Virus record (IMG/VR): IMGVR_UViG_3300014494_000005
Location: 284,924-348,923 of that record
Reading direction: 5' to 3' (one strand)
DNA length: 64,000 bases
Positions 3,395-39,767 of this stretch are shown one piece after another (within the stretch, counting starts at the first letter, position 1; every line of letters starts with the position of its first letter). The position numbers were made by a program, and so were the translations under genes. The notes beneath the pieces are model-generated. The model saw only the letters and a program-made list of their open reading frames with translations. It was not told the DNA's origin and searched no databases.

Positions 3395-4150
3395 ATGAAT
3401 AATAAATATATAATTATTATATTGTTATTTGTGTTGCAAATATTATCAGCACAACAACTAAATTATAAACATGGTAAACCAACTACTAAAGGTATTTGTG
3501 AATATGTTGATAATAATATTGATAGTATTATAATTGAATTTGAGAAATTTGTTGATGATAGTATCTATAATGTCTATATTGCAACCGATGACCTTAGTGA
3601 ATATTATGAAAGAGATGGTTTGGAATTAGGAGAATTTAATGCACCTAATTCAATTGTCATTACTAATCAAATAATATTTTTTGATTATGAATTAAAATAC
3701 TTATCATGGTGGAAAAAAATTAATATCAGCGAATCTAATCAATTTGTAAAAGCAACTATTTTGCATGAACTTATGCATGATTATTTTTATATTGTAATAC
3801 AGAAAACAAAAAAATTACAATCAATACAATTGGACTATCTGAATGGTATTCATATGTGTCCTATTAATAGTGGTGCAGTTTTTATTGAAGAAGGTATTTG
3901 TGAATATCTTGTGGAAAAAATGGGTCAAATGATATGTGATGATGATTATAAAAATTATAATAACGATTCTATATCAAAATATTTTAATACTTATTATGTC
4001 AAATATCATATGAGTAGATTGTTTGTAAAACCAATTGTTGATAAATTTGGTTTTGGAAAAGCAATTGAAGTCCTTGTTACTAATAAACCACCAAGTATTG
4101 ATGAAATCCAATATCCGAATAAGTTCTATAATAGATTAAAAATTTTTTAA
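3395..4150 (+). CDS. secreted zincin-type metallopeptidase-like protein
   Basis: N-terminal signal-like segment; HELMH plus downstream EEG (gluzincin-like third ligand). Confidence 0.6.
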   Translation: MNNKYIIIILLFVLQILSAQQLNYKHGKPTTKGICEYVDNNIDSIIIEFEKFVDDSIYNVYIATDDLSEYYERDGLELGEFNAPNSIVITNQIIFFDYELKYLSWWKKINISESNQFVKATILHELMHDYFYIVIQKTKKLQSIQLDYLNGIHMCPINSGAVFIEEGICEYLVEKMGQMICDDDYKNYNNDSISKYFNTYYVKYHMSRLFVKPIVDKFGFGKAIEVLVTNKPPSIDEIQYPNKFYNRLKIF

Positions 4151-4290
4151 TTATAAAAAAATTTTTTATAGAATTTTTTATGGTTTTGTTTTTGGTTAAG
4201 TATCTATATATCAGGAATTTTATTAATATTTTTTTAAAATAATTAAATATTTATAGAATTATTTTAACCTATGTGAAGATAGTCGTGTAG

Positions 4291-14828: not shown

Positions 14829-14904
14829 GCAATGTACAAAAAAAAATGACCTTGTATTGTAACAAATGCAGGGTTTTTTCGTATAATAATTATAAAACAA
14901 AATA

Positions 14905-16020: not shown

Positions 16021-16341
16021 ATGAACAAAAGAAATGCTATTATAGGTATCAAAGATATCATTAAGAAATATGGTGAAACTACCTCAATATATCTTAAGCT
16101 CAAAATTGAAGATAAACCTTGCTTAAGTTTAATTGTTAAAGGTAAAGAAATAAAATGTATATTTGTCGAATTGTATAATAAAGATAGTGTTACTGCTATT
16201 ACCAATATTAATGGTTATTTTAAAGAAAGTAATATTATTCCTTATGAAAATATTCCTGAACCAATATTAAATCAAATACTGAAACTATTAAAACATTACG
16301 AAAAAAGAAAAGTAGGAAATAAATACTTTGATATTTTGTAA
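16021..16341 (+). CDS. hypothetical protein
   Basis: ORF track. Confidence 0.75.
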   Translation: MNKRNAIIGIKDIIKKYGETTSIYLKLKIEDKPCLSLIVKGKEIKCIFVELYNKDSVTAITNINGYFKESNIIPYENIPEPILNQILKLLKHYEKRKVGNKYFDIL

Positions 16342-16388
16342 CATTTTTAATTAAAATCCGTATAATCATATATAACATTTAAATAACT

Positions 16389-16461
16389 GATAGTTGTAAC
16401 TGGAAACAGGGACCGAGTAGACCGAAGAGTGCACTGAACTCAGATGTTAGAATCGTTCTAA
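16389..16461 (+). ncRNA. candidate small RNA, family copy A
   Basis: no ORF after promoter 16337; GTTG-hairpin(CTG-GAAA-CAG)-GAGTAGAC-N23-GTTAGAATCGTTCTAA. Confidence 0.6.
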
Positions 16462-16508
16462 ATAATAATTGTCGAAAATGTTTAATATGTAGACAATTAA
16501 AGAAATAA

Positions 16509-16769
16509 TTATATATTTTTTCTAATATTTATATGATTTAATACTTCTATTAATAAAGGATGTTTATAATTTATAATATATGGTTTATCTCGTAAATAAT
16601 TAACATCAACTATTGGTGCACCATATTCATTATCAGTTTCAAATGGAATGTTTTCTTTTTTTAATAACTCAATATATCCCTTTTGTTGTTCAAGTAATGC
16701 TAATTCTAATTCATTTCCAATTTTAACTAAATCTGCATAATAATCAAAATCAATACTATATTGTTTCAT
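16509..16769 (-). CDS. hypothetical protein
   Basis: ORF track. Confidence 0.7.
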   Translation of the reverse strand: MKQYSIDFDYYADLVKIGNELELALLEQQKGYIELLKKENIPFETDNEYGAPIVDVNYLRDKPYIINYKHPLLIEVLNHINIRKNI

Positions 16770-16911
16770 ATTTTTATATTTTAAGTAAAGATAAATACTT
16801 TAAATATAAAATCCTATTCTTTTTTCTTTTTATTTTATTCTATTTGCATTGTACTATATATTGTGTAGTAATATGAAAATATTTACTATTTTTGTATTAA
16901 AATAATAATGT

Positions 16912-17421
16912 ATGAGTATTGAAAATAAAAATGAAAAGCGTAGACAATATTATGCTAAAAATAAAGAAAAAATAATTAAACAAGGAAAACAATGGCGTAT
17001 TAATAATAAAGAAAAGGTTAAAAATAATAAAAGACGATATTATTTAAAAAATAGAGAAAAAATTAAACAACAATGGATTGATAATAAAGAAATTCATAAA
17101 GAATATTATCTTAAATATTGGGACAGATATAAACAATATCGTATTGATAATAAAAAGAAAATAAAAGAAAGTGCAGTAAATAGAATTTATAAAATAACAC
17201 CAGAAAAACAAAACGAATTATATGTTAAACAAAATGGTTGTTGTGCTATATGTGGTATACCAGAAGATAAATTAAACTATTTTTTATCTATTGACCATAA
17301 TCATAAAACTAAAAAAGTAAGAGGATTGTTATGTCATACTTGTAATAGAGGCATTGGATTACTTAAAGATAATATTAATATATTACAAAAAGCAATTGAT
17401 TATATAAAAAATAGTAAATAA
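16912..17421 (+). CDS. endonuclease VII-like HNH nuclease (homing-type)
   Basis: QNGCCAICG...IDHNH...VRGLLCHTCNRGIG; K/Y-rich repeat N-terminus. Confidence 0.9.
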   Translation: MSIENKNEKRRQYYAKNKEKIIKQGKQWRINNKEKVKNNKRRYYLKNREKIKQQWIDNKEIHKEYYLKYWDRYKQYRIDNKKKIKESAVNRIYKITPEKQNELYVKQNGCCAICGIPEDKLNYFLSIDHNHKTKKVRGLLCHTCNRGIGLLKDNINILQKAIDYIKNSK

Positions 17422-17479
17422 TTGTAACATTTTTGGTTTAAATCCGTAATATAACACATAAACCAAAAAACATACACAA

Positions 17480-18307
17480 ATGAAATTCACTACAATTGCT
17501 CAAACAAAAACAGACACGGGCTTGTCTTATCTTGGTTCTGTTAACAAGAGTGCTAAACTTGCTAAGAACGGCAAAATTTCGCACCAATATACATATAGTA
17601 TCTATTTAGCACCTGCTAATATTTCTGGCTATAATGTATGCAGTCATAGTACGCCTGAATGTAGACTAAATTGTTTACATACTTCGGGGCGAAATGGTAT
17701 GGAAATTCTATCAGGTGTTAAGACAATGACAAATGATTGCCGTATTAAGAAAACCAAATTATTTTATGAACAACCTGAATATTTTATGCAATGGTTAATT
17801 GCTGAATTAGAACGGTATCAAAATAAAGCAAAAAAAGACGGTTATGGATTTAGTGTAAGGCTTAATTGTACTTCGGATATAAACTGGCAAACAGTTTTGA
17901 TAAATAGCAAAAATCTGTTTGAATTGTACCCGGACGTGGTTTTTTATGATTATACAAAAAACCCTGCTAAATTCATCAATAAGCCCAAAAATTATCATCT
18001 AACATTTTCATTTACCGGACGTAATGAAATATCATGTAAAGCATTACTTCAAAAAGGATTTAATATTGCAACAATATTTGATATAAAGAATGAAACAGAG
18101 TTGCCAAAAACATTTATGGGTTTTCCTGTTATTAATGGAGACAAAACCGATTATAGAGTTAATGACCCTAAAGGTATTATCGTTGGATTGAAATTTAAGA
18201 GAATTGCTAACCAAAAAGCAGAAAAGGATTGTTTTGTAGTTAATCCAACAACAGATGAACGTTGTCAGAATGTCAATGTACATGAAAATGAATTGACATT
18301 AGTTTAA
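17480..18307 (+). CDS. Gp88-like phage protein
   Basis: CxxxxxxCxxxC, RLNCTSD, FYDYTK, NYHLTFS, GDKTDYR..DP.G.IVGLKFK (recalled family). Confidence 0.75.
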   Translation: MKFTTIAQTKTDTGLSYLGSVNKSAKLAKNGKISHQYTYSIYLAPANISGYNVCSHSTPECRLNCLHTSGRNGMEILSGVKTMTNDCRIKKTKLFYEQPEYFMQWLIAELERYQNKAKKDGYGFSVRLNCTSDINWQTVLINSKNLFELYPDVVFYDYTKNPAKFINKPKNYHLTFSFTGRNEISCKALLQKGFNIATIFDIKNETELPKTFMGFPVINGDKTDYRVNDPKGIIVGLKFKRIANQKAEKDCFVVNPTTDERCQNVNVHENELTLV

Positions 18308-18339
18308 AATATATTATCTTTGTAGTTTATTTTTATAAA

Positions 18340-18540
18340 ATGGCAAACAAAGAGTATAACAAACAATGGTATATTGCAAATAAAGAACATATTAAACAAT
18401 ATAGGATTAATAATTCAGAAAAGATTAAAAATTATATGAAGGATTATTCTGAAAGGAATAAAGAAGCAATAAAATTAAAAAGAAAGAAATATATTAAAGC
18501 AAATAAAGAAAAAATAAAAATACAACAATGGAAAACTTAA
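18340..18540 (+). pseudogene. truncated N-terminus of an HNH-type nuclease
   Basis: NKEHIKQY/NKEKIK repeats like 16912 but no nuclease domain; runs into next leader. Confidence 0.55.
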
Positions 18541-18854
18541 AACTGTCTTTAGTTAAAACTGTAGAATATAATTTAAAACCCTTTGGTAAGTTCTTAATTA
18601 AATGGAACTGTGGCGAAAAATCAAAACAAAATCCAAACATAATACCATTTAGTGAACTTCATTTTGATTATAATACTGGTATGCCATATACTAAAGAACA
18701 ATACAAAGATATTGTTAAGTATATGAAGGCAAACAAAACTGATATACTAACCGAAAATGGTAAGTATTATACAATATTAAGTGAAAATCTGGTTGAATGT
18801 AAACACGGTAAATTAATTGATTATCGAAATAAATTAGAACTTCAAAATGTTTAA
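18528..18854 (+). CDS. hypothetical protein
   Basis: ORF track. Confidence 0.8.
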   Translation: MENLKLSLVKTVEYNLKPFGKFLIKWNCGEKSKQNPNIIPFSELHFDYNTGMPYTKEQYKDIVKYMKANKTDILTENGKYYTILSENLVECKHGKLIDYRNKLELQNV

Positions 18855-18873
18855 CCAATAAAAATATAAAGCA

Positions 18874-19407
18874 ATGAAAGAGCCAAAAATAACATTTAAA
18901 AATGTAAAGACTTTTCGAGGTATGGAAGGAATTGGATTAAACGCTGATATCTATATTAATGGTGTTAAATGTATATTTGTAATTGATGAAGCTAATGGTG
19001 GTGAATATAATTACGAAAATTATGAATATAACAATCCAAAAGCTGAACAGGTAAGAGCAAACATTAAATTAATGGACAATTATATTGCCAGTCTACCTGC
19101 AAAAATTTGTACTGATTTTGGTAAATCAATAAGTATTAAAGTTGATAGAGATACTTATATTAATGATAAATTACTTGAAATTGAAGAACAAAAAGCTGAT
19201 AAGAAAATGCAGAAGTTATTTAAAACAGGTATAGTATTTGGTGTACCAAATAGCGGTAAATATCAATACCTGAACTTCAAACGTCCATTGTCCGAAATAA
19301 TGTCAATGATTGTACAGAGACAAATTAATATTGTTAAGAAAGAGTATTGTAAAAATGGTGAACAAATTCTTAACACCAACCTTGCTAAACTCGGATTAAT
19401 TGTTTAA
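18874..19407 (+). CDS. hypothetical protein
   Basis: ORF track; leader AAAGCAATG. Confidence 0.85.
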   Translation: MKEPKITFKNVKTFRGMEGIGLNADIYINGVKCIFVIDEANGGEYNYENYEYNNPKAEQVRANIKLMDNYIASLPAKICTDFGKSISIKVDRDTYINDKLLEIEEQKADKKMQKLFKTGIVFGVPNSGKYQYLNFKRPLSEIMSMIVQRQINIVKKEYCKNGEQILNTNLAKLGLIV

Positions 19408-19668
19408 TATTGTACAAATGTTTAACCAATAAATAATATAATTATGATGTCAATGTTAGCAATTGCAATAATTGCTTGGTGGCATATATGTCTACCATTA
19501 TCAATAATATTAATTGCATTTTGTATTCTAATAATAGTTGTTAATGCAATAGATTATTAACACTAATGTCCGCAAGTTGTGCGGTGAATAATAATTATAA
19601 TGTCCGCATAATTTTGTAACAATTTAAACCAATGTACGTATATCAATGTACACAAAAACATAAACACA

Positions 19669-20130
19669 ATGGGAAAAGTAAAAGAAAAACAAGTACTTAT
19701 TGATGCAGTCATTGCTGACCTTAAGAAAGATTTTGAAGCAGGTGACTACACGGTATTGGAAGAACTATTGTTCATGATACCAAATGAGAACCTCATTCAT
19801 TCTCTACCAGAAGAAGACTGGAAAGAATATGAGAATGTACAAGAAAACGTACATGAGAATGTACAAAATGATAATGATTACTTTCTTGGTATTGAAACCT
19901 ATGACCCAAGAAATTTTAGTGATGAAGAAGTTCGGGAGTTTAAAGAAAAATGGGGTCAATCACACGGAGAACTCTGTGCTGAACTTGGTTATGATGAAGT
20001 CGATACTTCTGAGCTTATTATGATTGATTTCTTCTGGATTGAAGCAGATAAAAAATGGTATAATATTGCTGCCTCAATGTACACCGATAGAGAACAAGAA
20101 ATTGCTAATTACTTAAGACTTGGTAAATAA
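19669..20130 (+). CDS. acidic hypothetical protein
   Basis: ORF track; promoter 19615. Confidence 0.85.
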   Translation: MGKVKEKQVLIDAVIADLKKDFEAGDYTVLEELLFMIPNENLIHSLPEEDWKEYENVQENVHENVQNDNDYFLGIETYDPRNFSDEEVREFKEKWGQSHGELCAELGYDEVDTSELIMIDFFWIEADKKWYNIAASMYTDREQEIANYLRLGK

Positions 20131-20450
20131 TAATTAAAAACTTTATAATATGAATACATATCTTATTCTTTCATTTATTTTATTCCTGATATTAGGAATA
20201 TGTTGGACTAAAAGTAATTTCCTAAACCTTATAGTTAAAATTCTCTTATTTGGTATGGGAATTGTTGGACTTTTCTTGTGGTTACAATTAAATGGCTACA
20301 TTATAAAGATACATTAATATACTAATAGAATGTCCGTTCCATATTGTACAATAGGTATAATATTATTAATACTGTTTTGTATTGTACATGAAACATATTT
20401 AAAATATAAAAAGAAACACTAACCTTTTGTATTTATACAAAAGGTTTTTT

Positions 20451-20822
20451 ATGAATGTACTAAACCAGAATGTACTTGATAACTATGTTTCTTATTTAAA
20501 AAATAATAAATATAAGAATGTACTGCAGGAATTAAAACTTGATTATGATAGTGAAAATGGTACTGATTTCATCTTCCTGCTTTTAATTAAAATCAAACGA
20601 CATGAACATAATAAAGGTTGGGGTTCAAAAGTTCTTAAAGATATTGTACAAGTAGCTAATAAATATAATGTACAAGTCAGACTTTGGATAACAGCTATCT
20701 ATGGAATGAATTTAAATAGATTAATGAAATTCTATATGAAACAAGGTTTTGTCTTAGACCACGATGATTATATGATATACACACCAAAAAAAATTAGAAA
20801 AAATTGTAACAAATTAGAATAA
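20451..20822 (+). CDS. GNAT-like acetyltransferase (start moved to 20451)
   Basis: HNKGWGSKVL (motif A-like) and LMKFYMKQGF. Confidence 0.65.
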   Translation: MNVLNQNVLDNYVSYLKNNKYKNVLQELKLDYDSENGTDFIFLLLIKIKRHEHNKGWGSKVLKDIVQVANKYNVQVRLWITAIYGMNLNRLMKFYMKQGFVLDHDDYMIYTPKKIRKNCNKLE

Positions 20823-20855
20823 TATTCGTATCATTGTACATAAATTAGAAAAAAT

Positions 20856-21059
20856 ATGACAACAACATTAACAATAATCTTATACATATTTCTTTATCTT
20901 ATTGTTGGAAGAATATATACTAATCTCATGAAAAGTGATGAGTATGAAAATGCAGTTATTACTATCTTCTATCCAATAATAATCGTATGGAAAATTGCAA
21001 TGAGTATTGCTGATAATATAACAAACATTTTATTTAAAAAAAGTTCTAAAGATATTTAA
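20856..21059 (+). CDS. small membrane protein
   Basis: two hydrophobic segments; promoter 20805. Confidence 0.75.
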   Translation: MTTTLTIILYIFLYLIVGRIYTNLMKSDEYENAVITIFYPIIIVWKIAMSIADNITNILFKKSSKDI

Positions 21060-21067
21060 GAAACAAA

Positions 21068-21343
21068 ATGCCAACCGTAGTCTGACTGAAAATGATTTAC
21101 TATAGCTAAGTTGTCAAGTAAGTAGATGGTAGTCTTCGGACGGGAATTGAACTGTATTGTGGAGTAACGCACTCCAAAAGAGTAAGGCAGCTTAACGAAC
21201 TGCATACAGTGATGATATTCTTACGGCAATGGTTATTCGATGAGTGAGTTGCTACACTCCAAATTGCAATCGAGTAGAAAAACCCCTGTTATTCCCTGAA
21301 ACTGCACTTAGTACAGATATAAAAAGGAATTGCGGGGGTTTTT
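21068..21343 (+). ncRNA. candidate large structured RNA
   Basis: GC-richer ORF-free stretch with nested helices and a C(UUCG)G tetraloop. Confidence 0.6.
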
Positions 21344-21368
21344 CCTTTTAAAATACTTGATAAATTCA

Positions 21369-21472
21369 AAAAGTTGTTGTAGCTTTACAGCAGCTTTTTG
21401 TTTTTAGTGTTGTTCAAACCACCTGCTTTTATTTCATCTTTCATAAGTTAATTATTTTGCAGGTGGTTTTTT
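21369..21472 (+). terminator. two further tandem terminators
   Basis: AAAAGTTGTTGTA/TACAGCAGCTTTT (GU pairs work on + strand) and AAACCACCTGC/GCAGGTGGTTT plus T runs. Confidence 0.75.
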
Positions 21473-21525
21473 TATTTAATATTGTAACATTTTTAATTAA
21501 AATCCGTATAATATATTAATAAAAG

Positions 21526-21598
21526 GGTTGACATACCATTGTATGTTGAGAGAGTAGACTTCAACCTACCTATAACTCTGTTGTTAGAATCATTCTAA
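21526..21598 (+). ncRNA. candidate small RNA, family copy B
   Basis: GTTG-hairpin(ACATAC/GTATGT)-GAGTAGAC-N23-GTTAGAATCATTCTAA after promoter 21483. Confidence 0.6.
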
Positions 21599-21656
21599 AT
21601 AATATAATATTTGTAACATTTCCTGAAGATATCCGTATTATAAAGAAAACACAATT

Positions 21657-22676
21657 ATGGAAAAATTACCCACATTACATTTTCTACCATTAAATCAAGA
21701 CCAGAAAGATTTGATTATTTCAATTATAAATCATTTTGGTACTGCTCAACATCCGATTTGCAATAATACTACTATAGATGGTTTTATGGTCTCTTATTTG
21801 AAAGAGATTATTAATAGTAAGAAATTCAAAAAATCAATAAGTAATTTATCTGAAAACGGTAAAAGAATTTTAGCTGAAATTGAAGAAATAATATATCTTA
21901 ACCAAAAAAACACAATGAAAACAAAAACAAATTGGTCATCTCCAAAAACAAATATCTTTGCTGGTATAAATGACTTGCGCAAATGCTTTGCCAGTGGTTA
22001 TAAAGCCAGACTGGTCAGAGCACGTAATGAAGACTGTCAGCATCCTATTACGGAAAAAGCATATCCTAATGACTTCAGAAGCTACGAATTCTCTATAGGT
22101 TATATCAGTAATGTAAATAAAATAAAGTCTGAAGAAATAATGTATAATGAATTCGAAAAAAGTCTCAGTCTTAATTATATCAATTGTTATGGAACTACTG
22201 AAGCAAAAAATCGATATTACCAAACTGGTATATTAAGTAAAGACAATTTTCATACACAGGGTTGTTCTCATCTGGTACATGTAGATGACTATATTAAATT
22301 CCTTGAAAAATCAGGAGACCTTGACCGTGCACAAATGTACAAGAAACAATATAGAATACCTGAATATGGAAATACTGCACACTTCTTCGATTTCTATAGA
22401 TTAAAAAATGGTTATCATGATTGGAATGTGAAAAAATTTAAACGTAAACTCTGGGTTGTTGAAATGCTTAATGAGAAAGAACCTCAACCCCAGATTTCTA
22501 TAATGATGAAAACAATAATTAAAATTATTAATGTACTGGTATATCCTCTGAAATACATTCCCCAGAGGTCAGTACTGCGTATGAAAGAATATAATGTTCA
22601 TACATTCAGAGTTGGAGATGTAACAAATGGGTTCTGTGTTGAATTCCATATACCAAAGAAGTTCAGTTTTAAATAA
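21657..22676 (+). CDS. hypothetical protein, possible fusion with internal start at 21915
   Basis: in-frame leader-like TAACCAAAAAAACACAATG inside the ORF. Confidence 0.75.
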   Translation: MEKLPTLHFLPLNQDQKDLIISIINHFGTAQHPICNNTTIDGFMVSYLKEIINSKKFKKSISNLSENGKRILAEIEEIIYLNQKNTMKTKTNWSSPKTNIFAGINDLRKCFASGYKARLVRARNEDCQHPITEKAYPNDFRSYEFSIGYISNVNKIKSEEIMYNEFEKSLSLNYINCYGTTEAKNRYYQTGILSKDNFHTQGCSHLVHVDDYIKFLEKSGDLDRAQMYKKQYRIPEYGNTAHFFDFYRLKNGYHDWNVKKFKRKLWVVEMLNEKEPQPQISIMMKTIIKIINVLVYPLKYIPQRSVLRMKEYNVHTFRVGDVTNGFCVEFHIPKKFSFK

Positions 22677-22761
22677 AAATATTTTTCGCTCCGTTCTTGG
22701 AGCAACATTGTGTTTTGGTTTTTTTGGTTGATGTTTAATGGAGTTGTGACCCATTAAGCTG

Positions 22762-22792
22762 CCTCAGTGAAATTATATTCACTGAGGTTTTT
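22762..22792 (+). terminator. intrinsic terminator
   Basis: CCTCAGTGAA/TTCACTGAGG plus T run. Confidence 0.85.
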
Positions 22793-22832
22793 TATAAAAA
22801 TCTTTGTATTTATATGAAATTAATAGATTTTT

Positions 22833-23210
22833 ATGAGAACAAAAGAAGAAATATTAGAATATAATAAACAATATAAATTAAGAAATAAAGATAAGGTTGC
22901 AAAACATTGCGCAAAATATTATCAATTACATAAAAAAGAAATAAGTAAACGTTCAAGAATTGCTACAATAAAAGAACATGGATTAACATTAGACCAATAT
23001 GATGTTATTTTTAATAAACAGAATGGTAAATGTGTTATTTGTGGCAGACATCAAAGTGAATTAAAATTAACATTAGCTGTTGACCATGACCATATATCTG
23101 GTAAAGTAAGAGGATTATTATGTAATACCTGTAATCGTGGTATTGGTTATCTTCATGATGATATTAATTTATTAGAAAAAGCAATTCAATATATAAAAAC
23201 TAATCGTTGA
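22833..23210 (+). CDS. endonuclease VII-like HNH nuclease
   Basis: QNGKCVICG...VDHDH...VRGLLCNTCNRGIG. Confidence 0.9.
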   Translation: MRTKEEILEYNKQYKLRNKDKVAKHCAKYYQLHKKEISKRSRIATIKEHGLTLDQYDVIFNKQNGKCVICGRHQSELKLTLAVDHDHISGKVRGLLCNTCNRGIGYLHDDINLLEKAIQYIKTNR

Positions 23211-23253
23211 TTTTGTAACATTTTTAATTAAAATCCGTATAATATATAATAAT

Positions 23254-23328
23254 AGTTGTAACAGGATTGTACGCCTGAGACCAAGTATACTGATTAGTGC
23301 CTTTATGAATGTACGTAGAATCATTCTA
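23254..23328 (+). ncRNA. candidate small RNA, family copy C
   Basis: GTTG-hairpin(CAGG/CCTG)-AAGTATAC-N23-CGTAGAATCATTCTA after promoter 23214. Confidence 0.55.
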
Positions 23329-23409
23329 TATAATGTACATGAATAGATTGTCCATGAATGATTGTACACTTAAGCCATTGTACGACCATAATGTAAATTA
23401 TATCAACTA

Positions 23410-23955
23410 TTATTGATTGATGAATTGTTCATTCTTTTTCTTTACAGTAATTTCATATCCAAGAACATTTAACACTTTTTTAATATTATAAAATCTTGCT
23501 TTTTTATTACCATTTTCAATCATACTTAAAGTAGGTCTACTAATTTTTGCCATTTTACATATATCTTCCTGACGAAGATTTTGATAATTTCTACTTTCTT
23601 TAATTGTTTTACTAATTATTTGTATATCTGCATCTTCAAATATATATTCTTTTTTACTTATAATATTATCTGCATGATTATGTGCAACATTTAATAAATA
23701 ACATCCCTCATCTATTGATTTTTTTATCCATTCTTTTTCTTTTTCATCAAGATTATTTTCATCACATTCTTCCAGTATTTTAATAACTGGTTTATATCCT
23801 AATATTTTTAATTGGAAAACCCATTCATTAATTTTTTCAGAATGTGATTCAGTCATGTGTTGCTTGGGTCTTATCATATATTTACTACTCTTTCCTATAT
23901 AATGTAAATTATTTGTAAAGGGACAATAAAGACCATAAATTAAATTTTTATTCAT
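23410..23955 (-). CDS. GIY-YIG domain plus XRE HTH protein
   Basis: LIYGLY...HYIGKS; C-terminal LRQEDICKMAKISRPTLSMIENG. Confidence 0.8.
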   Translation of the reverse strand: MNKNLIYGLYCPFTNNLHYIGKSSKYMIRPKQHMTESHSEKINEWVFQLKILGYKPVIKILEECDENNLDEKEKEWIKKSIDEGCYLLNVAHNHADNIISKKEYIFEDADIQIISKTIKESRNYQNLRQEDICKMAKISRPTLSMIENGNKKARFYNIKKVLNVLGYEITVKKKNEQFINQ

Positions 23956-24285
23956 ATTAATATTTTAATATAAATACTGCCGTAAAATATATTTTCTATT
24001 TGTAAAGTATAGTTTACATTATAAAATATTATAATTTATTATAAATCAGGTTTTGGTAAAAATTAATGAGGGTCGAACGATGGTTGCGTGGGACATACAA
24101 AACTACCATTATTATATACTTTTCCTACCACATTTTCCCATTTTCTCCCACAATCTACCACAGCAATTTATTAGTCATTGTTTAACATCTTAATAATCAA
24201 TACTGCTAAATCTCAATAAAAACGCTTAAAATAGCAACATTAAAATAATTAAAGTACGTATAACTCCAAGTTATTGTACATATAT

Positions 24286-24537
24286 TTAAAACACATAAAA
24301 TTCCGGCAAAATACCTAAATAATAATATTTACCATTCACAATAGAAACAGTCATATAATAAAACATATCATCTTTTTCATATTCTGCTTCTCCACACTGA
24401 ATAAAACCATTTAAATTACATTTAGGTACAACAATACTGCCTATAGATAAATATAATTCTTCATCAATTTGACAAGGTTCTATTAGGTATTCATTTAAAT
24501 TCAATTTAGATTTTTCCCATGCTTTAAATTTTTTCAT
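24286..24537 (-). CDS. hypothetical protein
   Basis: ORF track. Confidence 0.75.
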   Translation of the reverse strand: MKKFKAWEKSKLNLNEYLIEPCQIDEELYLSIGSIVVPKCNLNGFIQCGEAEYEKDDMFYYMTVSIVNGKYYYLGILPEFYVF

Positions 24538-24931
24538 AATTTACTTTTTTCAAAAACATTTTAAACTTTTTACCACCAGACTTAAATTCAACATAACTAT
24601 TTTCAGCAGGTAACATTTCCAATACAAATTTATCATTATTACCATTTATTACTTTAATTGCTTCAAGGGGTTCATCATCATCGAATTGAATAAATAATTT
24701 CAGTTCTTTATTCTCTTTGATTTCAAAAAATTCTTCAAGACCATCAATATTAAAAATATGTTCTTCATTTTCATCATTAAGAATAGTTATACTACCATAT
24801 TTGACATCTATTGGATGATAATTTTTATCAATAGTTAATGTAGGTCTGTTATCTTTTAACATTCTGCATTCATCAATAGCGATTAATGAATACTTATTCC
24901 AGTCAACATTTATAATATCAGTTGTTTTCAT
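24524..24931 (-). CDS. hypothetical protein
   Basis: ORF track. Confidence 0.75.
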   Translation of the reverse strand: MKTTDIINVDWNKYSLIAIDECRMLKDNRPTLTIDKNYHPIDVKYGSITILNDENEEHIFNIDGLEEFFEIKENKELKLFIQFDDDEPLEAIKVINGNNDKFVLEMLPAENSYVEFKSGGKKFKMFLKKVNYEKI

Positions 24932-25272
24932 TATTTAATTTTTTTAAAGATTGTTTCTTTATTTGTCACCAATAATCTTTCGTTAATACATTTAATTTGC
25001 CATTCATTATTTAATATTTCTATTTCATTTTCCAATATTTTTATTTTTTCCAGATATTCAATACCAAAATACCAACATTTAGAGCAATAGACGGTTCTAC
25101 AATCACCACCATTATATTCTTCATGTGCAACACAATTATTACATAAGTCTTTACCACACATTTCACATTTTGCATTGGAACAAGCCATACTATTTTTTAT
25201 TTCAATTCCGCAGTCATCGCAATGTTTATGATAGACTATAATTTCTTTTGTACTTTTTTCTTCTTTTATCAT
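24931..25272 (-). CDS. Cys-rich zinc-finger protein
   Basis: four CxxC-type pairs. Confidence 0.75.
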   Translation of the reverse strand: MIKEEKSTKEIIVYHKHCDDCGIEIKNSMACSNAKCEMCGKDLCNNCVAHEEYNGGDCRTVYCSKCWYFGIEYLEKIKILENEIEILNNEWQIKCINERLLVTNKETIFKKIK

Positions 25273-25278
25273 AATTAT

Positions 25279-25641
25279 TTAATCAATTTTAATATTCTTT
25301 TTTTCTGCAAGTTTTCTCAATACTTTGGCTCTATAACGATATGCACTTAAGAGTTCTTCAGGAGTACTGGCAGAACCTATTTTTAGATATGATTTTGAAA
25401 TTTTTTTGTTATAATCAACACAACCGCCTTCTTTTTCATAAACGCATTTAAAACATACTGTATCTACTTTAAGGCATAGTGTACATTTTTTTACATGGCC
25501 ATAACCAGTTAATCTTGTTTTTAATAAAGAAAATACAAAATACTTTTTCTTTTTTTCTAAAATTTCTTTCAGAGTAATAGTTTCATATCTATGAATTAGA
25601 TTAATAAATTCATCAATATTTTCAGCATTATTATTTTTCAT
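25279..25641 (-). CDS. hypothetical protein with CxxC motifs
   Basis: ORF track. Confidence 0.75.
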   Translation of the reverse strand: MKNNNAENIDEFINLIHRYETITLKEILEKKKKYFVFSLLKTRLTGYGHVKKCTLCLKVDTVCFKCVYEKEGGCVDYNKKISKSYLKIGSASTPEELLSAYRYRAKVLRKLAEKKNIKID

Positions 25642-25674
25642 AAGTTTTAATTAAATAAAATAGTATATTTATTT

Positions 25675-25878
25675 TTATTTCAATTCCACAGTCATCGCAA
25701 TGTTTATGAAAAGAATTACAATAATAACAATACCAATTACATACACAGAAATTATATCAACATTATTTCTTAAATATTTTTTATATTTCTTTGTAGGTAA
25801 TTTAAAATGCCAGAGGATATACAATACATAAAGTATTGCAATACCAATCCAACCGAAAAATCTAACTAAGTATTTCAT
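25675..25878 (-). CDS. small membrane protein
   Basis: two hydrophobic helices. Confidence 0.75.
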   Translation of the reverse strand: MKYLVRFFGWIGIAILYVLYILWHFKLPTKKYKKYLRNNVDIISVYVIGIVIIVILFINIAMTVELK

Positions 25879-25889
25879 AATATCTGTTT

Positions 25890-26330
25890 TTATTCGTGAA
25901 ATATATATTGAAAATTTTCTTTATAATCTCGTTTATCAGCACGTTCTTTTACAAGCGATGGATTATTTAATGACATATAATATTCATTTTTTCCTAATCC
26001 AACTATGTGTGCAGTTAAATCCCAAAATCCATCATCACCAGTTCCCCATTGTATTGTAATTGATGTTAATTTATCAACCAAAATACTTCTTTTATTTTTT
26101 ACAAACTCTTTAAGTTGTCTTATTTGTTCTGGTGAATAATTATTTTTTAGCCATTCACCTTTTTCTTTATATGAATATCCACCAACAGAGTTCCATTGTA
26201 ATTTATTAATCATTTCCCAATATACGTCTTCATTTTCAGACATAATTACATTTTCTGATTGTTGTAATTGTTCAACATAATCTTGAATTGTTTTAACTGC
26301 TTTTAAAAAATCTTCTTTGTATAAAATCAT
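25890..26330 (-). CDS. DUF4240-like protein
   Basis: YWEMI...GDDGFWDL.AHIVG.G..Y....NP...Y.ENF (recalled). Confidence 0.55.
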   Translation of the reverse strand: MILYKEDFLKAVKTIQDYVEQLQQSENVIMSENEDVYWEMINKLQWNSVGGYSYKEKGEWLKNNYSPEQIRQLKEFVKNKRSILVDKLTSITIQWGTGDDGFWDLTAHIVGLGKNEYYMSLNNPSLVKERADKRDYKENFQYIFHE

Positions 26331-26408
26331 AGAATTGTATTATTAATAATATTATTTTTATGTAAATCTATCACCTCTCGGCAATCTTTTTTTCTTCTTT
26401 AATTATAA

Positions 26409-26753
26409 TTAATCTTTATTTAATACTGCAATATTTTTATTAAATCCCTCTTGTTGTTCTTTAAAATACTGTTCCCATGTTATACCGCATAGTCTCTGGT
26501 ATTCTCTTGTATTTTCAATTAATTCTTTTTTTGTTTTTCCCGAAGCAATAACACGTTCTTCCACGTAATTAAAATCAATTCTTTCACCATCTTGATTAGT
26601 CCATTGATTTTGTTTATCATCTGCTGTATTGCGATTAAAACCAATAATTAAATACATTTTACCTTTTTCTAAAGGTTTACTTATTCTTGCAGTATCACAT
26701 TTAACTATTTCTCTGCAGTCCTGAATAAGTTTATCGTAGTTAATTTCTTTCAT
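26409..26753 (-). CDS. hypothetical protein
   Basis: ORF track. Confidence 0.8.
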   Translation of the reverse strand: MKEINYDKLIQDCREIVKCDTARISKPLEKGKMYLIIGFNRNTADDKQNQWTNQDGERIDFNYVEERVIASGKTKKELIENTREYQRLCGITWEQYFKEQQEGFNKNIAVLNKD

Positions 26754-26992
26754 GTTGTTATCACTTTAAATTTATTATAATCCTGAATTACTTTATCAAT
26801 AAATTCAGCTTTTTCTTTATTAGTACCTTTAACATTTAATATTAAATCTTTTGCAAATATTAACGATTTTTTTGCATGAAAAACTGCAGTATTAAAATCT
26901 GATTCATCTCTTAAACCACCAATTATATGTTCTTCCAATAATAAATTGGCGCAATAATTTATGTGATAATCTTTTATAATTTTCTTATTCAT
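26750..26992 (-). CDS. hypothetical protein
   Basis: ORF track; ATGA coupling. Confidence 0.75.
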   Translation of the reverse strand: MNKKIIKDYHINYCANLLLEEHIIGGLRDESDFNTAVFHAKKSLIFAKDLILNVKGTNKEKAEFIDKVIQDYNKFKVITT

Positions 26993-27063
26993 GATTTATT
27001 AATTTTTTAATATATATTCTTTTAAATATTTTGGATTTTTTTGCCATTTATTTCCAATCTTCA

Positions 27064-27297
27064 TTAACTACTTTGTATTCCATTTTTATAATTATATAAT
27101 AATTTTAATAATTCAGGATTATTTTTACAAAGTCTCGAATGACTTAACATCATTGGTATATCATCTTTGCACCATTTGCAAACAAAAGAAGTATCACTTT
27201 TTTGAATCCAATAATGTGAATCACTTAACCAATCATACATTTGAATTTCAAATTCATTTTCTTCCGAAATAATCGGTTTTGGTAATAATTTTATCAT
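27064..27297 (-). CDS. hypothetical protein
   Basis: ORF track. Confidence 0.75.
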   Translation of the reverse strand: MIKLLPKPIISEENEFEIQMYDWLSDSHYWIQKSDTSFVCKWCKDDIPMMLSHSRLCKNNPELLKLLYNYKNGIQSS

Positions 27298-27300
27298 AAT

Positions 27301-27594
27301 TTATAATTTTATTTCTTTTAATAAATTTAATGTATCATCTGAAAGACTTTCTTTTTTTGCTATACAGACTGCTACACATGGTGTTTCTCCAAATGCTAAA
27401 TGACTTATATCTCCAGCATTTTTAAATGCATTTGCAGCTAATCCAAATTGAATCTTTTTAACATTTCTTTTTGCATTAACACTGACATTTCCTACAAGAT
27501 TAGAAGTAAAGACAACATATTCGTCATCATCAATTTGTTTATTAAGCCATTTCATAAAATGGTCTTTTGTGTAGATATAAGTATCTCTATCCAT
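27301..27594 (-). CDS. hypothetical protein
   Basis: ORF track. Confidence 0.8.
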   Translation of the reverse strand: MDRDTYIYTKDHFMKWLNKQIDDDEYVVFTSNLVGNVSVNAKRNVKKIQFGLAANAFKNAGDISHLAFGETPCVAVCIAKKESLSDDTLNLLKEIKL

Positions 27595-27607
27595 TTTGAT
27601 ATATATT

Positions 27608-27817
27608 TTAATATTTTAATTTTTTATATGTTAATACTCTATATGAATAATATTTATTTATTTGTCCATCACCTCGTTGAGTATAAAAAAAATCACCTTT
27701 TTTATTAAACCTACCCACTAATTGGGTTGTATAATCTCGTACTATAAACATATACATTTCATCTTTTTCACTACAGAAAGTATTTTCTATTTCTTTCATG
27801 TTTTTATCTTCATCCAT
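27608..27817 (-). CDS. hypothetical protein
   Basis: ORF track. Confidence 0.7.
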   Translation of the reverse strand: MDEDKNMKEIENTFCSEKDEMYMFIVRDYTTQLVGRFNKKGDFFYTQRGDGQINKYYSYRVLTYKKLKY

Positions 27818-27823
27818 ATAATT

Positions 27824-28102
27824 TTATTTTAAATCTGATTTATTCTCCAAAAATTCAATTGCATCTTTTAATGGTTGATAATTATTTGTGGTGAGAATAA
27901 TATCATCCCAATTACCATATTTACATTTATAACCACAGATGTATTTAATAGCAATCCAAATTCTTTTAATGAAATTCTTATAAGTTTTTAAATGAATTTG
28001 TAAATAAACCATTCTTATATCTCTAAATTCATCATCTTTTATAATAATTATTTGATGTTCAGGAGAACCGCATTCACATAGTATTAAATTTTCTTTTTCC
28101 AT
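27824..28102 (-). CDS. conserved hypothetical phage protein
   Basis: LILCECGSPEHQ...RIWIAIKYICGY. Confidence 0.8.
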   Translation of the reverse strand: MEKENLILCECGSPEHQIIIIKDDEFRDIRMVYLQIHLKTYKNFIKRIWIAIKYICGYKCKYGNWDDIILTTNNYQPLKDAIEFLENKSDLK

Positions 28103-28126
28103 AATATTATCTTTATTAATTAAATA

Positions 28127-28561
28127 TTATAAACAATAACCTTTATCTGCCCACCATTCCAATAAATCAGGTTGTGTAAGTTTATAAAGTTCATTATTGC
28201 ATTCCATTTTTAAAACCATTTGATTATATGCTGCATAAGCAGTTATACAAGTTTCGCCACAAAATCCTACTTTTTTGGATAAATATTCTAAGAATTCACT
28301 TGCTAATTCTGGTAAATCTTCCATTGGTATTTCCATCATTTTTATCGCCACATCTACCGCACGGTCACTACCAATAACAACATTTGATTGTGAGCTTTGT
28401 GGTTTATTTATTCCTAACAACAATTGATTATATGCTTCATCCAAAGCACTAATAAAATGGTATTCCTTTAAAGTTTTAATTGTTTCGCATTCAATAATTG
28501 TTGTACCAATTACATTACCTTCCTTGTCAATGATTTCCATTTTTACTTTACAATTTTTCAT
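28127..28561 (-). CDS. hypothetical protein
   Basis: ORF track. Confidence 0.75.
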   Translation of the reverse strand: MKNCKVKMEIIDKEGNVIGTTIIECETIKTLKEYHFISALDEAYNQLLLGINKPQSSQSNVVIGSDRAVDVAIKMMEIPMEDLPELASEFLEYLSKKVGFCGETCITAYAAYNQMVLKMECNNELYKLTQPDLLEWWADKGYCL

Positions 28562-38894: not shown

Positions 38895-39767
38895 ATGTTT
38901 AAAACAATATCAGATAAAAAACAAAAATTAATTGATGCTAAGAATGCTTCACCATTAATATTTGGAGAAGAAATTAGTGTTAAATATAATGCTGTTAATC
39001 CTTATTTTGATAAAGAAAGAGAAAATCGGACAGTTAATTGTATGATAATTAAAATTCTTAAGAATAAAATTGTTGTTAAACATGTAGATGGTTTTATAAA
39101 TGCGCCAGTATATACAATACAAAAAGATGATATTGTTGGAAGAGAAACACTATATATTGGTGAAAATCCTTTTGATGAAAAATTTGATAGCATAAAAGCT
39201 GTTAATTTCACTCTTGAAAGTATTTTATTTAATTTAAATATTTTGGGTGAAAAAAATAATGATAAATATCATATAAATAATGTTCCAATTACTGAATTAA
39301 ATTGGAATCCTTTTATATTTTTAAAAGACGGAACAAAACAATATTATCAAAGACCATTTGTCTGGACAGTTGCTGATAAACAACTTTTAATTGAATCAAT
39401 ATATCATGGAATTGATTGCGGTAAAATATTGGTTCGAATGAGAAGTTGGAAAGAACTGGAACAAATGCAAAAAAATGGGGAAACTGAACTATCATTCAAA
39501 GACATTATTGATGGTAAGCAAAGATTAAATACCATAAAAGAATTTATGAATAATAAATTTTCCGATAGTTTTGGAAATTGTTATGGCGATTTAAGTTATT
39601 ATTCACAACATAAATTTACAAATCATCAATTGTTCAGTTATGCAGAAATGCCGGAAAATTCAAAAGATGAAGATGTACTACATCAATTTTTAAGATTAAA
39701 TTTTACTGGTATTCCTCAAAGTAAAGAACATATTGATTATGTGAAATCATTAAAATCAAAATTTTAA
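38895..39767 (+). CDS. DUF262 (GmrS/ParB-like) domain protein
   Basis: YQRPFVW, LIESI, IIDGKQRL, FLRLN; no DUF1524/HNH half. Confidence 0.85.
   Translation: MFKTISDKKQKLIDAKNASPLIFGEEISVKYNAVNPYFDKERENRTVNCMIIKILKNKIVVKHVDGFINAPVYTIQKDDIVGRETLYIGENPFDEKFDSIKAVNFTLESILFNLNILGEKNNDKYHINNVPITELNWNPFIFLKDGTKQYYQRPFVWTVADKQLLIESIYHGIDCGKILVRMRSWKELEQMQKNGETELSFKDIIDGKQRLNTIKEFMNNKFSDSFGNCYGDLSYYSQHKFTNHQLFSYAEMPENSKDEDVLHQFLRLNFTGIPQSKEHIDYVKSLKSKF

What the first reader, a model, noticed from the sequence alone, without database searches (positions are those of the whole stretch)
16337..23328. Three ORF-less small-RNA-like elements with an identical promoter and a fixed 23-nt variable segment
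Seen: copies A (16389), B (21526) and C (23254) follow the same 31 bp, TTGTAACATTTTTAATTAAAATCCGTATAAT, whereas other promoters differ in their spacers. None leads to an ORF. All read GTTG-[hairpin with different sequence but kept pairing: CTG/CAG, ACATAC/GTATGT, CAGG/CCTG]-RAGTA(G/T)AC-N23-(G/C)(T/G)TAGAATC(A/G)TTCTA. The 23-mers are unrelated: CGAAGAGTGCACTGAACTCAGAT, TTCAACCTACCTATAACTCTGTT, TGATTAGTGCCTTTATGAATGTA. Inference: a scaffold-plus-variable-segment RNA family, possibly guide-like, decoy or ribozyme. A and C lie near EndoVII-type HNH genes. The 3' palindrome could instead be a 7-1-7 repressor site. I cannot match it to an RNA family I know.
Basis: partly seen in the sequence, partly recalled or inferred. 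Interest (0 to 1): 0.88.

Follow-up and report, generated by a model that had tools for sequence, protein, structure and literature searches.

The report
Unannotated small RNA family in Bacteroidota phages
The three ORF-less elements are real copies of a small non-coding RNA gene family that is absent from Rfam and common in phages of Bacteroidota, but the "variable 23-mer" is a hairpin loop, a stem strand and a linker rather than a free guide, and the function is still unknown.

Summary
Three copies (16390-16465, 21521-21602, 23252-23333, + strand) each follow an identical 31-bp promoter, and a covariance model finds no other copy in the window.

They belong to a large family. I collected 34 distinct "palindrome-type" copies from relatives of this 349-kb phage. 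I also collected 46 distinct "terminator-type" copies from other phage contigs, plus copies in the cultured Tenacibaculum phage Larrie. No member that was scanned (the window and six terminator-type loci) matches Rfam 15.

Terminator-type copies run from a Bacteroidota-type promoter through about 70 nt to a U-tract. This argues that the family encodes discrete small RNAs.

The anatomy is:
- a 5' hairpin with strong covariation;
- an invariant GAGUAGAC box, which forms the 5' strand and loop start of a small hairpin (GUAG-N8-CUAC);
- a linker;
- a sequence-invariant 15-nt palindrome in place of the U-tract.

B carries the family consensus; A and C carry divergent loops.

The copies sit in conserved slots, and the nearby HNH genes are insertions into those slots. 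TnpB does not co-occur with the family. A resemblance to Flavobacterium 36-nt CRISPR repeats is not statistically significant.

My best reading is a set of abundant, early, trans-acting RNAs that work through the invariant box. The partner is unknown.

The parts
16336..16366 (+). Promoter of copy A (TTGTAAC-N15-CCGTATAAT class; the spacer holds the 12-bp palindrome TTTTAATTAAAA)
   Evidence: Exact 31-mer. The promoter class is enriched at 30 matches against 2.2 expected. Function as a promoter is inferred.
16390..16465 (+). Copy A RNA body. 5' hairpin CTG/GAAA/CAG at 16400-16409. Box GAGTAGAC at 16415-22. Small hairpin GTAG 16417-20, loop ACCGAAGA 16421-28, GTGC 16429-32 (3 of 4 pairs form). 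Linker 16433-46. Palindrome TTAGAATCGTTCTAA at 16447-61.
   Evidence: Covariance-model hit of 66 bits, E 6.5e-18. Sequence. Columns. This is the slot upstream of the GP88-like gene in relatives.
21482..21512 (+). Promoter of copy B, placed just after an intrinsic terminator (21423-21474)
21521..21602 (+). Copy B RNA body, closest to the family consensus. 5' hairpin ACATAC/CATT/GTATGT at 21531-46. Box at 21552-59. Small hairpin GTAG 21554-57, loop ACTTCAAC 21558-65, CTAC 21566-69. Palindrome TTAGAATCATTCTAA at 21584-98. GGGTTGA (21525-31) could alternatively pair with TCAACCT (21561-67).
   Evidence: Covariance-model hit of 73.1 bits. Also.
21611..21641 (+). Second promoter (P2), 14 bp after B's palindrome, serving ORF 21657-22676. 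This is the typical family layout of P1, element, P2, gene.
   Evidence: 0 mismatches to the class pattern. The same layout appears in relatives.
23213..23243 (+). Promoter of copy C, overlapping the end of HNH gene 22833-23210
23252..23333 (+). Copy C RNA body. 5' hairpin CAGG/ATTGTACG/CCTG at 23262-77. Box AAGTATAC at 23283-90. Small hairpin GTAT 23285-88, loop ACTGATTA 23289-96, GTGC 23297-300 (all 4 pairs form, two as G.U). Palindrome GTAGAATCATTCTAT at 23315-29, with the outer pair as G.U.
   Evidence: Covariance-model hit of 70.8 bits. Also. It is orthologous to L001:10113-10188, which sits between the HNH gene and rIIA.
23329..23400 (+). Array of ATTGTMC heptamers downstream of C. The same arrays follow the orthologous copy in L001, L094 and L078. 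Whether they belong to the element is uncertain.
   Evidence: The motif is enriched at 30 matches against 11.7 expected in the window.

Best explanation
A, B and C are three paralogous genes of a small non-coding RNA family absent from Rfam, carried by phages of Bacteroidota.

**Proposed transcript.** Each copy is transcribed from its own strong phage promoter into an RNA of about 80-95 nt. The RNA contains:
1. a 5' hairpin conserved in structure only;
2. the invariant box GAGUAGAC, which forms the 5' strand and first loop bases of a small hairpin (GUAG, 8-nt loop, CUAC);
3. a U/C-rich linker;
4. a 15-nt AU-rich palindrome (UUAGAAUnAUUCUAA).

**Role of the palindrome.** It sits where the sister branch of the family has a U-tract terminator. 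It therefore most likely defines the 3' end, by termination, processing or a bound protein.

**Proposed function.** The RNAs are made in quantity early in infection and act in trans. The invariant box and hairpin are read by a conserved partner, either a protein or an RNA. The 8-nt loop is ACUCCAAC in most members (ACUUCAAC in B) but differs in A and C, which would give paralog specificity.

**Shown:** the family, its promoters, the covarying hairpin, the small hairpin, the terminators of the sister branch, and the conserved genomic slots.

**Inferred:** transcription, the RNA ends in this phage, action in trans, and the existence of a partner.
For: - Three covariance-model hits and no others in the window.
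- 34 distinct palindrome-type homologs were collected from metagenomic, viral and one MAG contig.
- 46 distinct terminator-type homologs were collected. The palindrome-type model detects them at E values of about 1e-8 to 1e-3, most between 1e-7 and 1e-4.
- Of 50 terminator-type copies, 40 have a TAnnTTTG box and 32 also have a TTTG box at the right spacing. All end in T6-9 about 70 nt downstream. These look like discrete small RNA genes.
- 5' hairpin: all 4 pairs covary, and 13 G.U cells fix the transcribed strand as +.
- Small hairpin: 84% of cells pair in the terminator-type set and 89.6% in the palindrome-type set, against 23-52% in the terminator-type slid controls. Changes are wobble-compatible (UA 25 / UG 20; GC 35 / GU 8).
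- Orientation relative to neighbouring genes is not conserved. Palindrome-type copies are mostly co-directional and terminator-type copies mostly antisense. This fits a trans-acting product better than a cis leader.
- There are several copies per genome: 3 here, at least 4 within 2.5 kb in Tenacibaculum phage Larrie, and at least 7 in one 40-kb contig.
- The window and six terminator-type loci that were scanned have no Rfam match.
Against: - There are no expression data.
- Predicted folds of A, B and C are no more stable than shuffles (z = -0.30, -0.74, +0.71).
- RNAalifold alone recovers only the palindrome hairpin.
- The invariance of GAGTAGAC and of the palindrome is partly built in by the search patterns used to collect homologs.
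- The palindrome has no U-tract, shows no true compensatory change and has 6 one-sided breaks. It may work as DNA.
- In the usual layout the element is followed 14-27 bp later by another promoter and a gene, so a cis role cannot be excluded.
- No partner or target was found.
Confidence: 0.45

Rival explanations
1. Cis-acting boundary or regulatory cassette. Promoter P1, a structured leader and a stop or roadblock at the palindrome together insulate or tune early transcription units. Examples would be a pause or attenuation module, or a protein-bound bidirectional block. The conserved cassette would also serve as a recombination point, like the PeSL cassettes of T4-type phages.
For: - The cassette sits between a terminator and the next promoter, in fixed slots before the GP88-like, rIIA, 339-aa and DUF932 genes.
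- This phage group uses composite hairpin-in-promoter cassettes like PeSLs (PMC4122927).
- Two convergent copies can share one palindrome (L084, L066).
- HNH genes have inserted next to the cassettes.
Against: - Terminator-type copies are mostly antisense to both neighbours and end in their own terminators.
- A promoter that feeds only a stop needs a reason to exist.
- A and C face convergent genes.
- PeSLs have no conserved transcribed body.
Confidence: 0.2
2. CRISPR-repeat mimic: an RNA anti-CRISPR (solitary repeat unit) or crRNA-like RNA aimed at type VI-B or II-C systems of Bacteroidota hosts.
For: - Palindrome-type class I copies start with GUUGUAACUG. This matches the first 10 nt of the 36-nt repeat of Flavobacterium branchiophilum (GTTGTAACTGCCC...CACAAC; PMC5395568 Table 4).
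- GUUG ... internal hairpin ... CAAC brackets about 41 nt, as those repeats do.
- The box region GAAGAGUAGACUCCAAC resembles GAAGGGUAAACACAAC.
- The copies have strong promoters, occur several per genome and come from Bacteroidota phages. These are the traits described for Racrs (PMC10651486, abstract).
Against: - Local alignment of the repeats to the family is not better than shuffles (39/400 and 9/400 for palindrome-type; 80/400 for terminator-type). Profile search finds nothing.
- TTGTAAC is also this phage's own -35 box.
- Terminator-type copies lack GUUGUAAC.
- The invariant GAGUAGAC is absent from the repeats.
- The 5' hairpin varies freely in sequence.
- No host array could be examined.
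Confidence: 0.1
3. The palindrome is a DNA operator, a 7-1-7 site like Fur/PerR/Zur boxes (from my own knowledge of those boxes), for a host or phage dimeric regulator. The rest of the element is secondary.
For: - Both arms are conserved in sequence. There are 6 one-sided breaks and no Watson-Crick compensation.
- The site is symmetric and can be shared by convergent copies.
- It lies 14-27 bp upstream of the -35 box of P2.
Against: - This does not explain the covarying 5' hairpin, the G.U pairs, the small hairpin, or the terminator-type branch, which lacks the palindrome.
- Two changes keep RNA pairing by wobble (C; L124).
- In the window the palindrome occurs only in the three elements.
Confidence: 0.1
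4. One reading: guide RNAs (constant scaffold plus a 23-nt guide) for an RNA-guided protein, such as the two TnpB-like proteins in the window or an unseen Cas protein.
For: - Promoter, short scaffold and a paralog-specific segment are present.
- Two TnpB-like genes lie at 52068-53216 and 54604-55845.
- A and C differ from the consensus in the segment.
Against: - The segment is conserved in most of the 80 homologs and is partly paired.
- It has no match in the window.
- TnpB homologs occur in 2 of about 230 loci (none in the palindrome-type loci).
- The covariance model does not hit the TnpB 3' regions.
- A 30-36-nt scaffold is far shorter than known TnpB guide-RNA scaffolds (own knowledge).
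Confidence: 0.05

Closest known systems
PeSL cassettes (promoter-early stem-loop) of T4-type phages (PMC4122927, PMC2839356)
   Same: - Repeated, highly conserved promoter cassettes lie between small early genes in plastic regions.
- In this phage group a terminator hairpin and U-run can sit inside the promoter (window 14846-14887; L071, L072, L080).
- Mobile endonuclease genes and variable ORFs lie next to the cassettes.
   Different: - PeSLs are only a terminator plus a promoter.
- Here the promoter drives a conserved, structured, non-coding body of about 80 nt that also exists in unrelated phages with a different promoter type.
C4 / CI antisense RNAs of phages P1, P7 and P4 (Rfam family C4; from own knowledge)
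   Same: - Small stable phage RNAs with a conserved scaffold.
- Short loops differ between relatives and set specificity.
   Different: - No sequence or structure match: cmscan finds nothing, even at E up to 10.
- Those RNAs are processed from a leader and have known target sites nearby. No targets were found here.
RNA anti-CRISPRs (Racrs) / solitary repeat units (PMC10651486)
   Same: - Promoter-driven, ORF-less, repeat-like small RNAs in phage genomes, sometimes in several copies.
- The 5' end of class I copies equals the start of a Flavobacterium 36-nt repeat.
   Different: - Similarity to the repeats is not significant.
- The invariant box is not in the repeats.
- The internal hairpin is free to vary.
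TnpB omega-RNA / Cas12 crRNA
   Same: A 5' constant part is followed by a 3' segment that differs between paralogs. TnpB genes are present in the window.
   Different: - The segment is conserved across phages and partly paired.
- The scaffold is far too short.
- The elements are not adjacent to, and do not co-occur with, TnpB.
Fur/PerR/Zur-type 7-1-7 operators (own knowledge)
   Same: A TTAGAAT-n-ATTCTAA geometry with an AATnATT core, and both arms conserved in sequence.
   Different: - The site lies about 85 bp downstream of one promoter, inside a transcribed structured element.
- The sister branch has a U-tract at this position instead.
- No regulator was identified.

Membership tests
Any Rfam 15 family (including C4, 6S, ribozymes, riboswitches, tRNA/tmRNA) | A covariance-model match at or near the gathering score | tested here: not met
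   - No hit at gathering score over the whole window.
- No hit on A at E up to 10. Only unrelated weak hits near B and C.
- Terminator-type loci hit only tRNAs elsewhere.
- ARAGORN finds 0 genes.
New family (GAGUAGAC-box small RNA of Bacteroidota phages), as defined here | Own promoter; structure-conserved 5' hairpin; GAGUAGAC box forming GUAG-N8-CUAC; 3' palindrome or U-tract | tested here: met
   A, B and C score 66-73 bits with model R1. The promoters are exact.
CRISPR crRNA / mini-array | Two or more repeats flanking a spacer, with the repeat matching an array served by cas genes | tested here: not met
   - The sequences flanking the segment are unlike each other.
- No tandem repeats of the unit were found.
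- No cas genes appear among the window ORFs scanned.
Racr / solitary repeat unit | Sequence and structure mimic the host CRISPR repeat | tested here: inconclusive
   There is a 10-nt identity to the F. branchiophilum repeat and a GUUG..CAAC bracket. Alignment scores fall within the shuffle range. Host arrays were not available.
TnpB omega-RNA | Encoded at the 3' end of tnpB or the transposon right end; scaffold of about 100 nt or more followed by the guide | tested here: not met
   The elements lie 29-38 kb from the tnpB genes. The model does not hit the tnpB 3' regions. TnpB is absent from nearly all family loci.
PeSL cassette | Terminator stem-loop fused to an early promoter, with no conserved transcribed body | tested here: not met
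   The promoters of this phage group do include PeSL-like composites. The elements, however, carry a conserved 80-nt body.
Intrinsic terminator (for the 3' palindrome) | G+C-rich hairpin followed by a U-tract | tested here: not met
   The palindrome has one G-C pair and is followed by AAUAA. The sister branch does have hairpin plus U6-9.
Fur-family 7-1-7 operator | Bound by a Fur-family dimer and overlapping a regulated promoter | not testable with these tools
   Only the geometry and sequence conservation could be seen.

The most novel reading that the evidence does not exclude
The family is a programmable phage RNA. A constant scaffold (5' hairpin plus the GAGUAGAC box) is recognised by an unknown host or phage effector. 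The 8-nt loop and adjacent segment are swapped in paralogs such as A and C to redirect that effector. Alternatively, they decoy a Bacteroidota RNA-guided defence such as Cas13b against different host or competitor targets. This would be an RNA-based counter-defence or take-over module encoded in early anti-defence islands.
Probability: 0.12. Interest if true: 0.88.

Novelty: new variant of a known kind. Interest (0 to 1): 0.66.

Why it matters
- Few phage-encoded small RNAs have a known function, and I know of none characterised for phages of Bacteroidota, a major phylum of gut, marine and sediment bacteria.
- This family is widespread (sediment, sludge, freshwater and marine contigs), occurs in several copies per genome and has strong promoters.
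- It sits among early genes of families often seen in anti-defence islands (DUF932, SprT-like, DUF1281_C, GP88).
- It has one cultured representative, Tenacibaculum phage Larrie, so the function can be tested directly.
- If the RNA proves to be a decoy or a specificity-swappable regulator, it would add an RNA layer to phage take-over or counter-defence.
- Even if it is a plain regulatory RNA, it is a clean candidate for a new Rfam family.

Tried and rejected
- **Known phage relatives:** megablast of the 8-kb region against GenBank phages found nothing.
- **Micro-ORF:** the short reading frame (M)LESF across the palindrome is not conserved, because L046 and copies with a central G have a stop. 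Rejected by reading the sequences.
- **Targets of the 23-mers:** no match in the window at up to 3 mismatches. Only chance 10-13-mers are complementary. Loop complements are not enriched. GGAGTCTACTC is not enriched. The consensus has no match in E. coli genomes.
- **HNH link:** distant homologs of the HNH gene have no element beside them.
- **Long closing helices:** a test of each copy's own 5' flank against the flanks of other copies was not significant (p = 0.52). A 7-bp GGUUGGA/UCCAACC helix paired in 55% of cells, the same as shuffles.
- **Stop-codon recoding:** reading through TAG or TGA does not lengthen ORFs.
- **339-aa neighbour protein:** no Pfam, PDB or atlas lead.
- **Literature:** searches for the sequence strings, for DUF932/PF17338 and for Cellulophaga-type phages gave nothing relevant.
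- **CRISPR repeats:** profile and local-alignment tests of Flavobacterium repeats against the family were not significant.
- **Hammerhead-like and tRNA-like readings:** considered by eye and dropped. The core motifs are absent, and Rfam and ARAGORN are negative.

Full report

The 31-mer TTGTAACATTTTTAATTAAAATCCGTATAAT occurs exactly three times, at 16336, 21482 and 23213 on the + strand. No shuffle gave any match. Each copy is followed by a small hairpin, RAGTAKAC, about 24 nt, and TAGAATCRTTCTA.

The promoter belongs to a class, TTGTAAC-N15-CCGTATWAT, with 30 matches in the window against 2.2 expected. Nearly all of these lie just upstream of ORFs on the same strand. The three elements are special only in being letter-identical; 12135, 12793 and 13194 carry almost the same spacer.

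No tRNA and no Rfam 15 family match the elements, either at gathering score or at E up to 10.

**2. Where does the window come from?**

The window is the last 64 kb of a 348,923-bp viral contig (IMGVR_UViG_3300014494_000005, also Ga0182017_10000001) with 24-29% G+C. It encodes a distant rIIA homolog, EndoVII-type HNH and GIY-YIG endonucleases and two TnpB-like proteins. No related genome exists among GenBank phages. There is no sign of stop-codon recoding.

**3. Homologs of the palindrome type.**

Pattern scans found the following:
- an identical phage in a second sample (L002, L003);
- a divergent 299-kb relative with an element in the same place as C, between an HNH gene and rIIA (L001);
- 26 metagenome loci;
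- one contig binned in a Lentimicrobium (Bacteroidota) MAG (L094).

A covariance model (R1) built from 21 distinct copies finds exactly three copies in the window, even with filters off. It finds further, more divergent copies in the relatives, giving 34 distinct sequences (alignment A3).

**4. The "variable" segment is mostly conserved.**

The family consensus is (A)GTTGTAAC, a hairpin, GAGACC, GAGTAGAC, TCCAACCTACCTTATAYTCT, N4, TTAGAATSRTTCTAA, AT. Copy B is close to this consensus. A, C and a minority of others (L001, L078, L080, L086, L094) differ in the 8 nt after the box.

**5. Structure.**

- **5' hairpin.** All four pairs show changes on both sides: 49 double-change cells against 18.4 ± 2.9 in shuffles. 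Pairing is 85%, the slid controls are low, and 13 G.U cells fix the + strand as the RNA strand. One caveat applies: the alignment was fitted to the model.
- **Small hairpin.** GUAG of the box pairs with CUAC 8 nt downstream. Pairing is 89.6% in A3. In window terms, A forms 3 of 4 pairs (GTAG/GTGC), B forms 4 of 4 (GTAG/CTAC), and C forms 4 of 4, two of them as wobble pairs (GTAT/GTGC).
- **What the N23 is.**
- **Palindrome.** It is almost invariant on both arms. The changes seen are 6 one-sided breaks and 2 that keep a wobble pair (C; L124). The data cannot say whether it works as an RNA hairpin or as a DNA site.
- **Overall stability.** A, B and C are not unusually stable (z = -0.30, -0.74, +0.71). 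RNAalifold alone predicts only the palindrome hairpin. The structure is modest.

**6. A sister branch with terminators.**

Searching the viral collection for the consensus 16-mer, and then for GAGTAGAC-N16-T7 without fixing the segment, gave about 50 further distinct copies in other phage contigs of 4-366 kb.

These copies have a Bacteroidota-type promoter. TAnnTTTG is present in 40 of 50, and an upstream TTTG at the right spacing in 32 of 50. About 45-60 nt follow, including a variable hairpin, then GA(A)GAGTAGAC-TCC, about 13 nt and a run of 6-9 T.

On 46 distinct 36-mers (A5), the GUAG/CUAC hairpin is paired in 84% of cells, against 23-52% when the partner is slid. All variation on its 3' side is wobble-compatible (UA 25 / UG 20; GC 35 / GU 8). 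With an AAG/CUU extension, pairing is 80%. The invariant box is thus the 5' strand and loop start of an intrinsic terminator hairpin whose loop reads ACUCCNNC.

Model R1, built only from palindrome-type copies, detects these terminator-type copies at E values of about 1e-8 to 1e-3, most between 1e-7 and 1e-4. The two types are one family.

The only cultured phage with copies is Tenacibaculum phage Larrie. It has at least four copies within 2.5 kb, all in unannotated gaps.

A promoter, about 70 nt and a terminator is what a discrete small RNA gene looks like. This is the strongest indirect evidence that the window's elements are RNA genes too.

**7. Genomic context.**

In relatives, the palindrome-type copies occupy fixed slots:
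- directly upstream of the GP88-like gene, the homolog of window 17480-18307, with a second promoter in between (8 loci);
- directly upstream of rIIA (6 loci);
- on either side of the 339-aa gene, the homolog of window 21657-22676;
- once upstream of a DUF932 gene.

Copy A is therefore the pre-GP88 copy, with an HNH gene (16912-17421) and a small minus-strand ORF inserted behind it. Copy C is the pre-rIIA copy, with about 9 kb inserted, including a minus-strand block at 23410-28561. Copy B is the copy upstream of the 339-aa gene.

This explains the HNH proximity as homing-endonuclease insertion into intergenic slots. Distant HNH homologs have no element next to them.

Terminator-type copies flank GP88 or DUF932 genes. 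They share with the palindrome-type loci a set of early genes, including SprT-like, DUF1281_C and DUF6011 proteins.

Orientation is not conserved. Palindrome-type copies are mostly co-directional with both neighbours (14 same/same). Terminator-type copies are mostly antisense to both (26 opposite/opposite of 51). Two convergent copies can share one palindrome (L084, L066).

**8. What it most likely is.**

I read the elements as genes for abundant early small RNAs that act in trans through the invariant box and hairpin. The loop is constant in most members and swapped in A and C, and would act as a specificity element. The palindrome would replace the terminator as the 3'-end determinant in this phage lineage. 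I put this at 0.45.

- **Shown:** family membership, promoters, two hairpins, terminators in the sister branch, conserved slots, and several copies per genome.
- **Inferred:** transcription here, the RNA ends, action in trans, and a partner.

**9. Rival readings.**

- **Cis-acting boundary or regulatory cassette (0.2).** It fits the layout of terminator, P1, element, P2 and gene, and the PeSL-like promoter architecture of these phages (PMC4122927). It fits poorly with the antisense, self-terminated sister branch.
- **CRISPR-repeat mimic (0.1).** Class I copies begin with GUUGUAACUG, the first 10 nt of the 36-nt repeat of Flavobacterium branchiophilum, and are bracketed GUUG...CAAC like such repeats (PMC5395568 Table 4). 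Alignment scores are within the range of shuffles. TTGTAAC is also the phage's -35 box, and the invariant box is absent from the repeats. This is a lead, not a result.
- **DNA operator at the palindrome (0.1).** It explains the sequence conservation of both arms but nothing else.
- **Guide RNA for TnpB or a Cas protein (0.05).** It is contradicted by conservation and pairing of the segment, the lack of targets and the lack of co-occurrence with TnpB.

**10. Limits.**

- The homolog sets were collected with patterns that fixed the box and either the palindrome or the T-run. The invariance of those parts is therefore partly circular. Deviating cores found by the model (GGGTAGAC, AAGTGTAC, GGGTGTAC) and deviating palindromes give some independent support.
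- I could not search the rest of the 349-kb genome except by pattern.
- I could not examine any host genome.
- No expression data were available.

**Verdict.** The finding is real and lies outside every family in Rfam 15. The guide-like interpretation is mostly wrong, and the function remains open.

Noticed in passing
window 52068-53216 (+) and 54604-55845 (+): Two TnpB-like ORFs (OrfB_IS605 plus Cas12f1-like TNB; the first also has the HTH domain) lie in a phage genome, with no TnpA nearby among the ORFs scanned. Homologs appear in only 2 of about 230 fetched loci (L141, L101). Their own guide RNAs were not mapped.
   Followed up: partly
window-wide, e.g. 12135, 12793, 13194, 14857, 17422, 21611, 32693, 37472, 56295(-): About 28 copies of the promoter-like motif TTGTAAC-N15-(C)CGTATWAT (30 matches against 2.2 expected). 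The motif is unlike the Bacteroidota TTTG/TAnnTTTG promoters seen in the sister phages. Which polymerase or sigma factor reads it is unknown.
   Followed up: partly
window 14846-14887; also L071, L072, L080 upstream of their elements: Composite terminator-promoters. A hairpin carries the -35 box in its loop, its U-run serves as the spacer, and the -10 box follows. This resembles the PeSL cassettes of T4-type phages.
   Followed up: partly
window 23266-23384; L001 10190-10400; L094 downstream of 3769(-); L078 11520-11600: Arrays of 4-10 ATTGTMC (or AATGTAC) heptamers follow the copy in the pre-rIIA slot. The same heptamer abuts the -10 box of some promoters (4990(-), 5950(-), 10922). In the window the count is 30 against 11.7 expected. 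This is probably a protein-binding motif.
   Followed up: partly
window 23410-23955 (-): An ORF combining a weak GIY-YIG nuclease match with an HTH_3 domain. It converges on copy C and starts a 5-kb minus-strand block that relatives lack at this position.
   Followed up: no
window 38895-39767 (+): A phage ORF with a GmrSD_N (DUF262) restriction-endonuclease domain.
   Followed up: no
L084 746-878; L066 1951-2092; L233 (Tenacibaculum phage Larrie) about 4080-4290: Convergent pairs of family copies overlap at their 3' ends. In L084 and L066 the two copies share one palindrome.
   Followed up: partly
L095 986-1825; L100 1149-2114; L098 1806-2693 and 8977-9822; L099 7408-8178: Terminator-type copies sit among GP88, DUF932, DUF1281_C and SprT-like genes. 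In L095 and L100 a copy lies on each side of a single gene.
   Followed up: partly
window 16336-16366, 21482-21512, 23213-23243: The identical promoters hold a perfect 12-bp palindrome, TTTTAATTAAAA, in the spacer. Exact identity is kept although the RNAs behind them have diverged. This hints at a shared regulator site or gene conversion.
   Followed up: no
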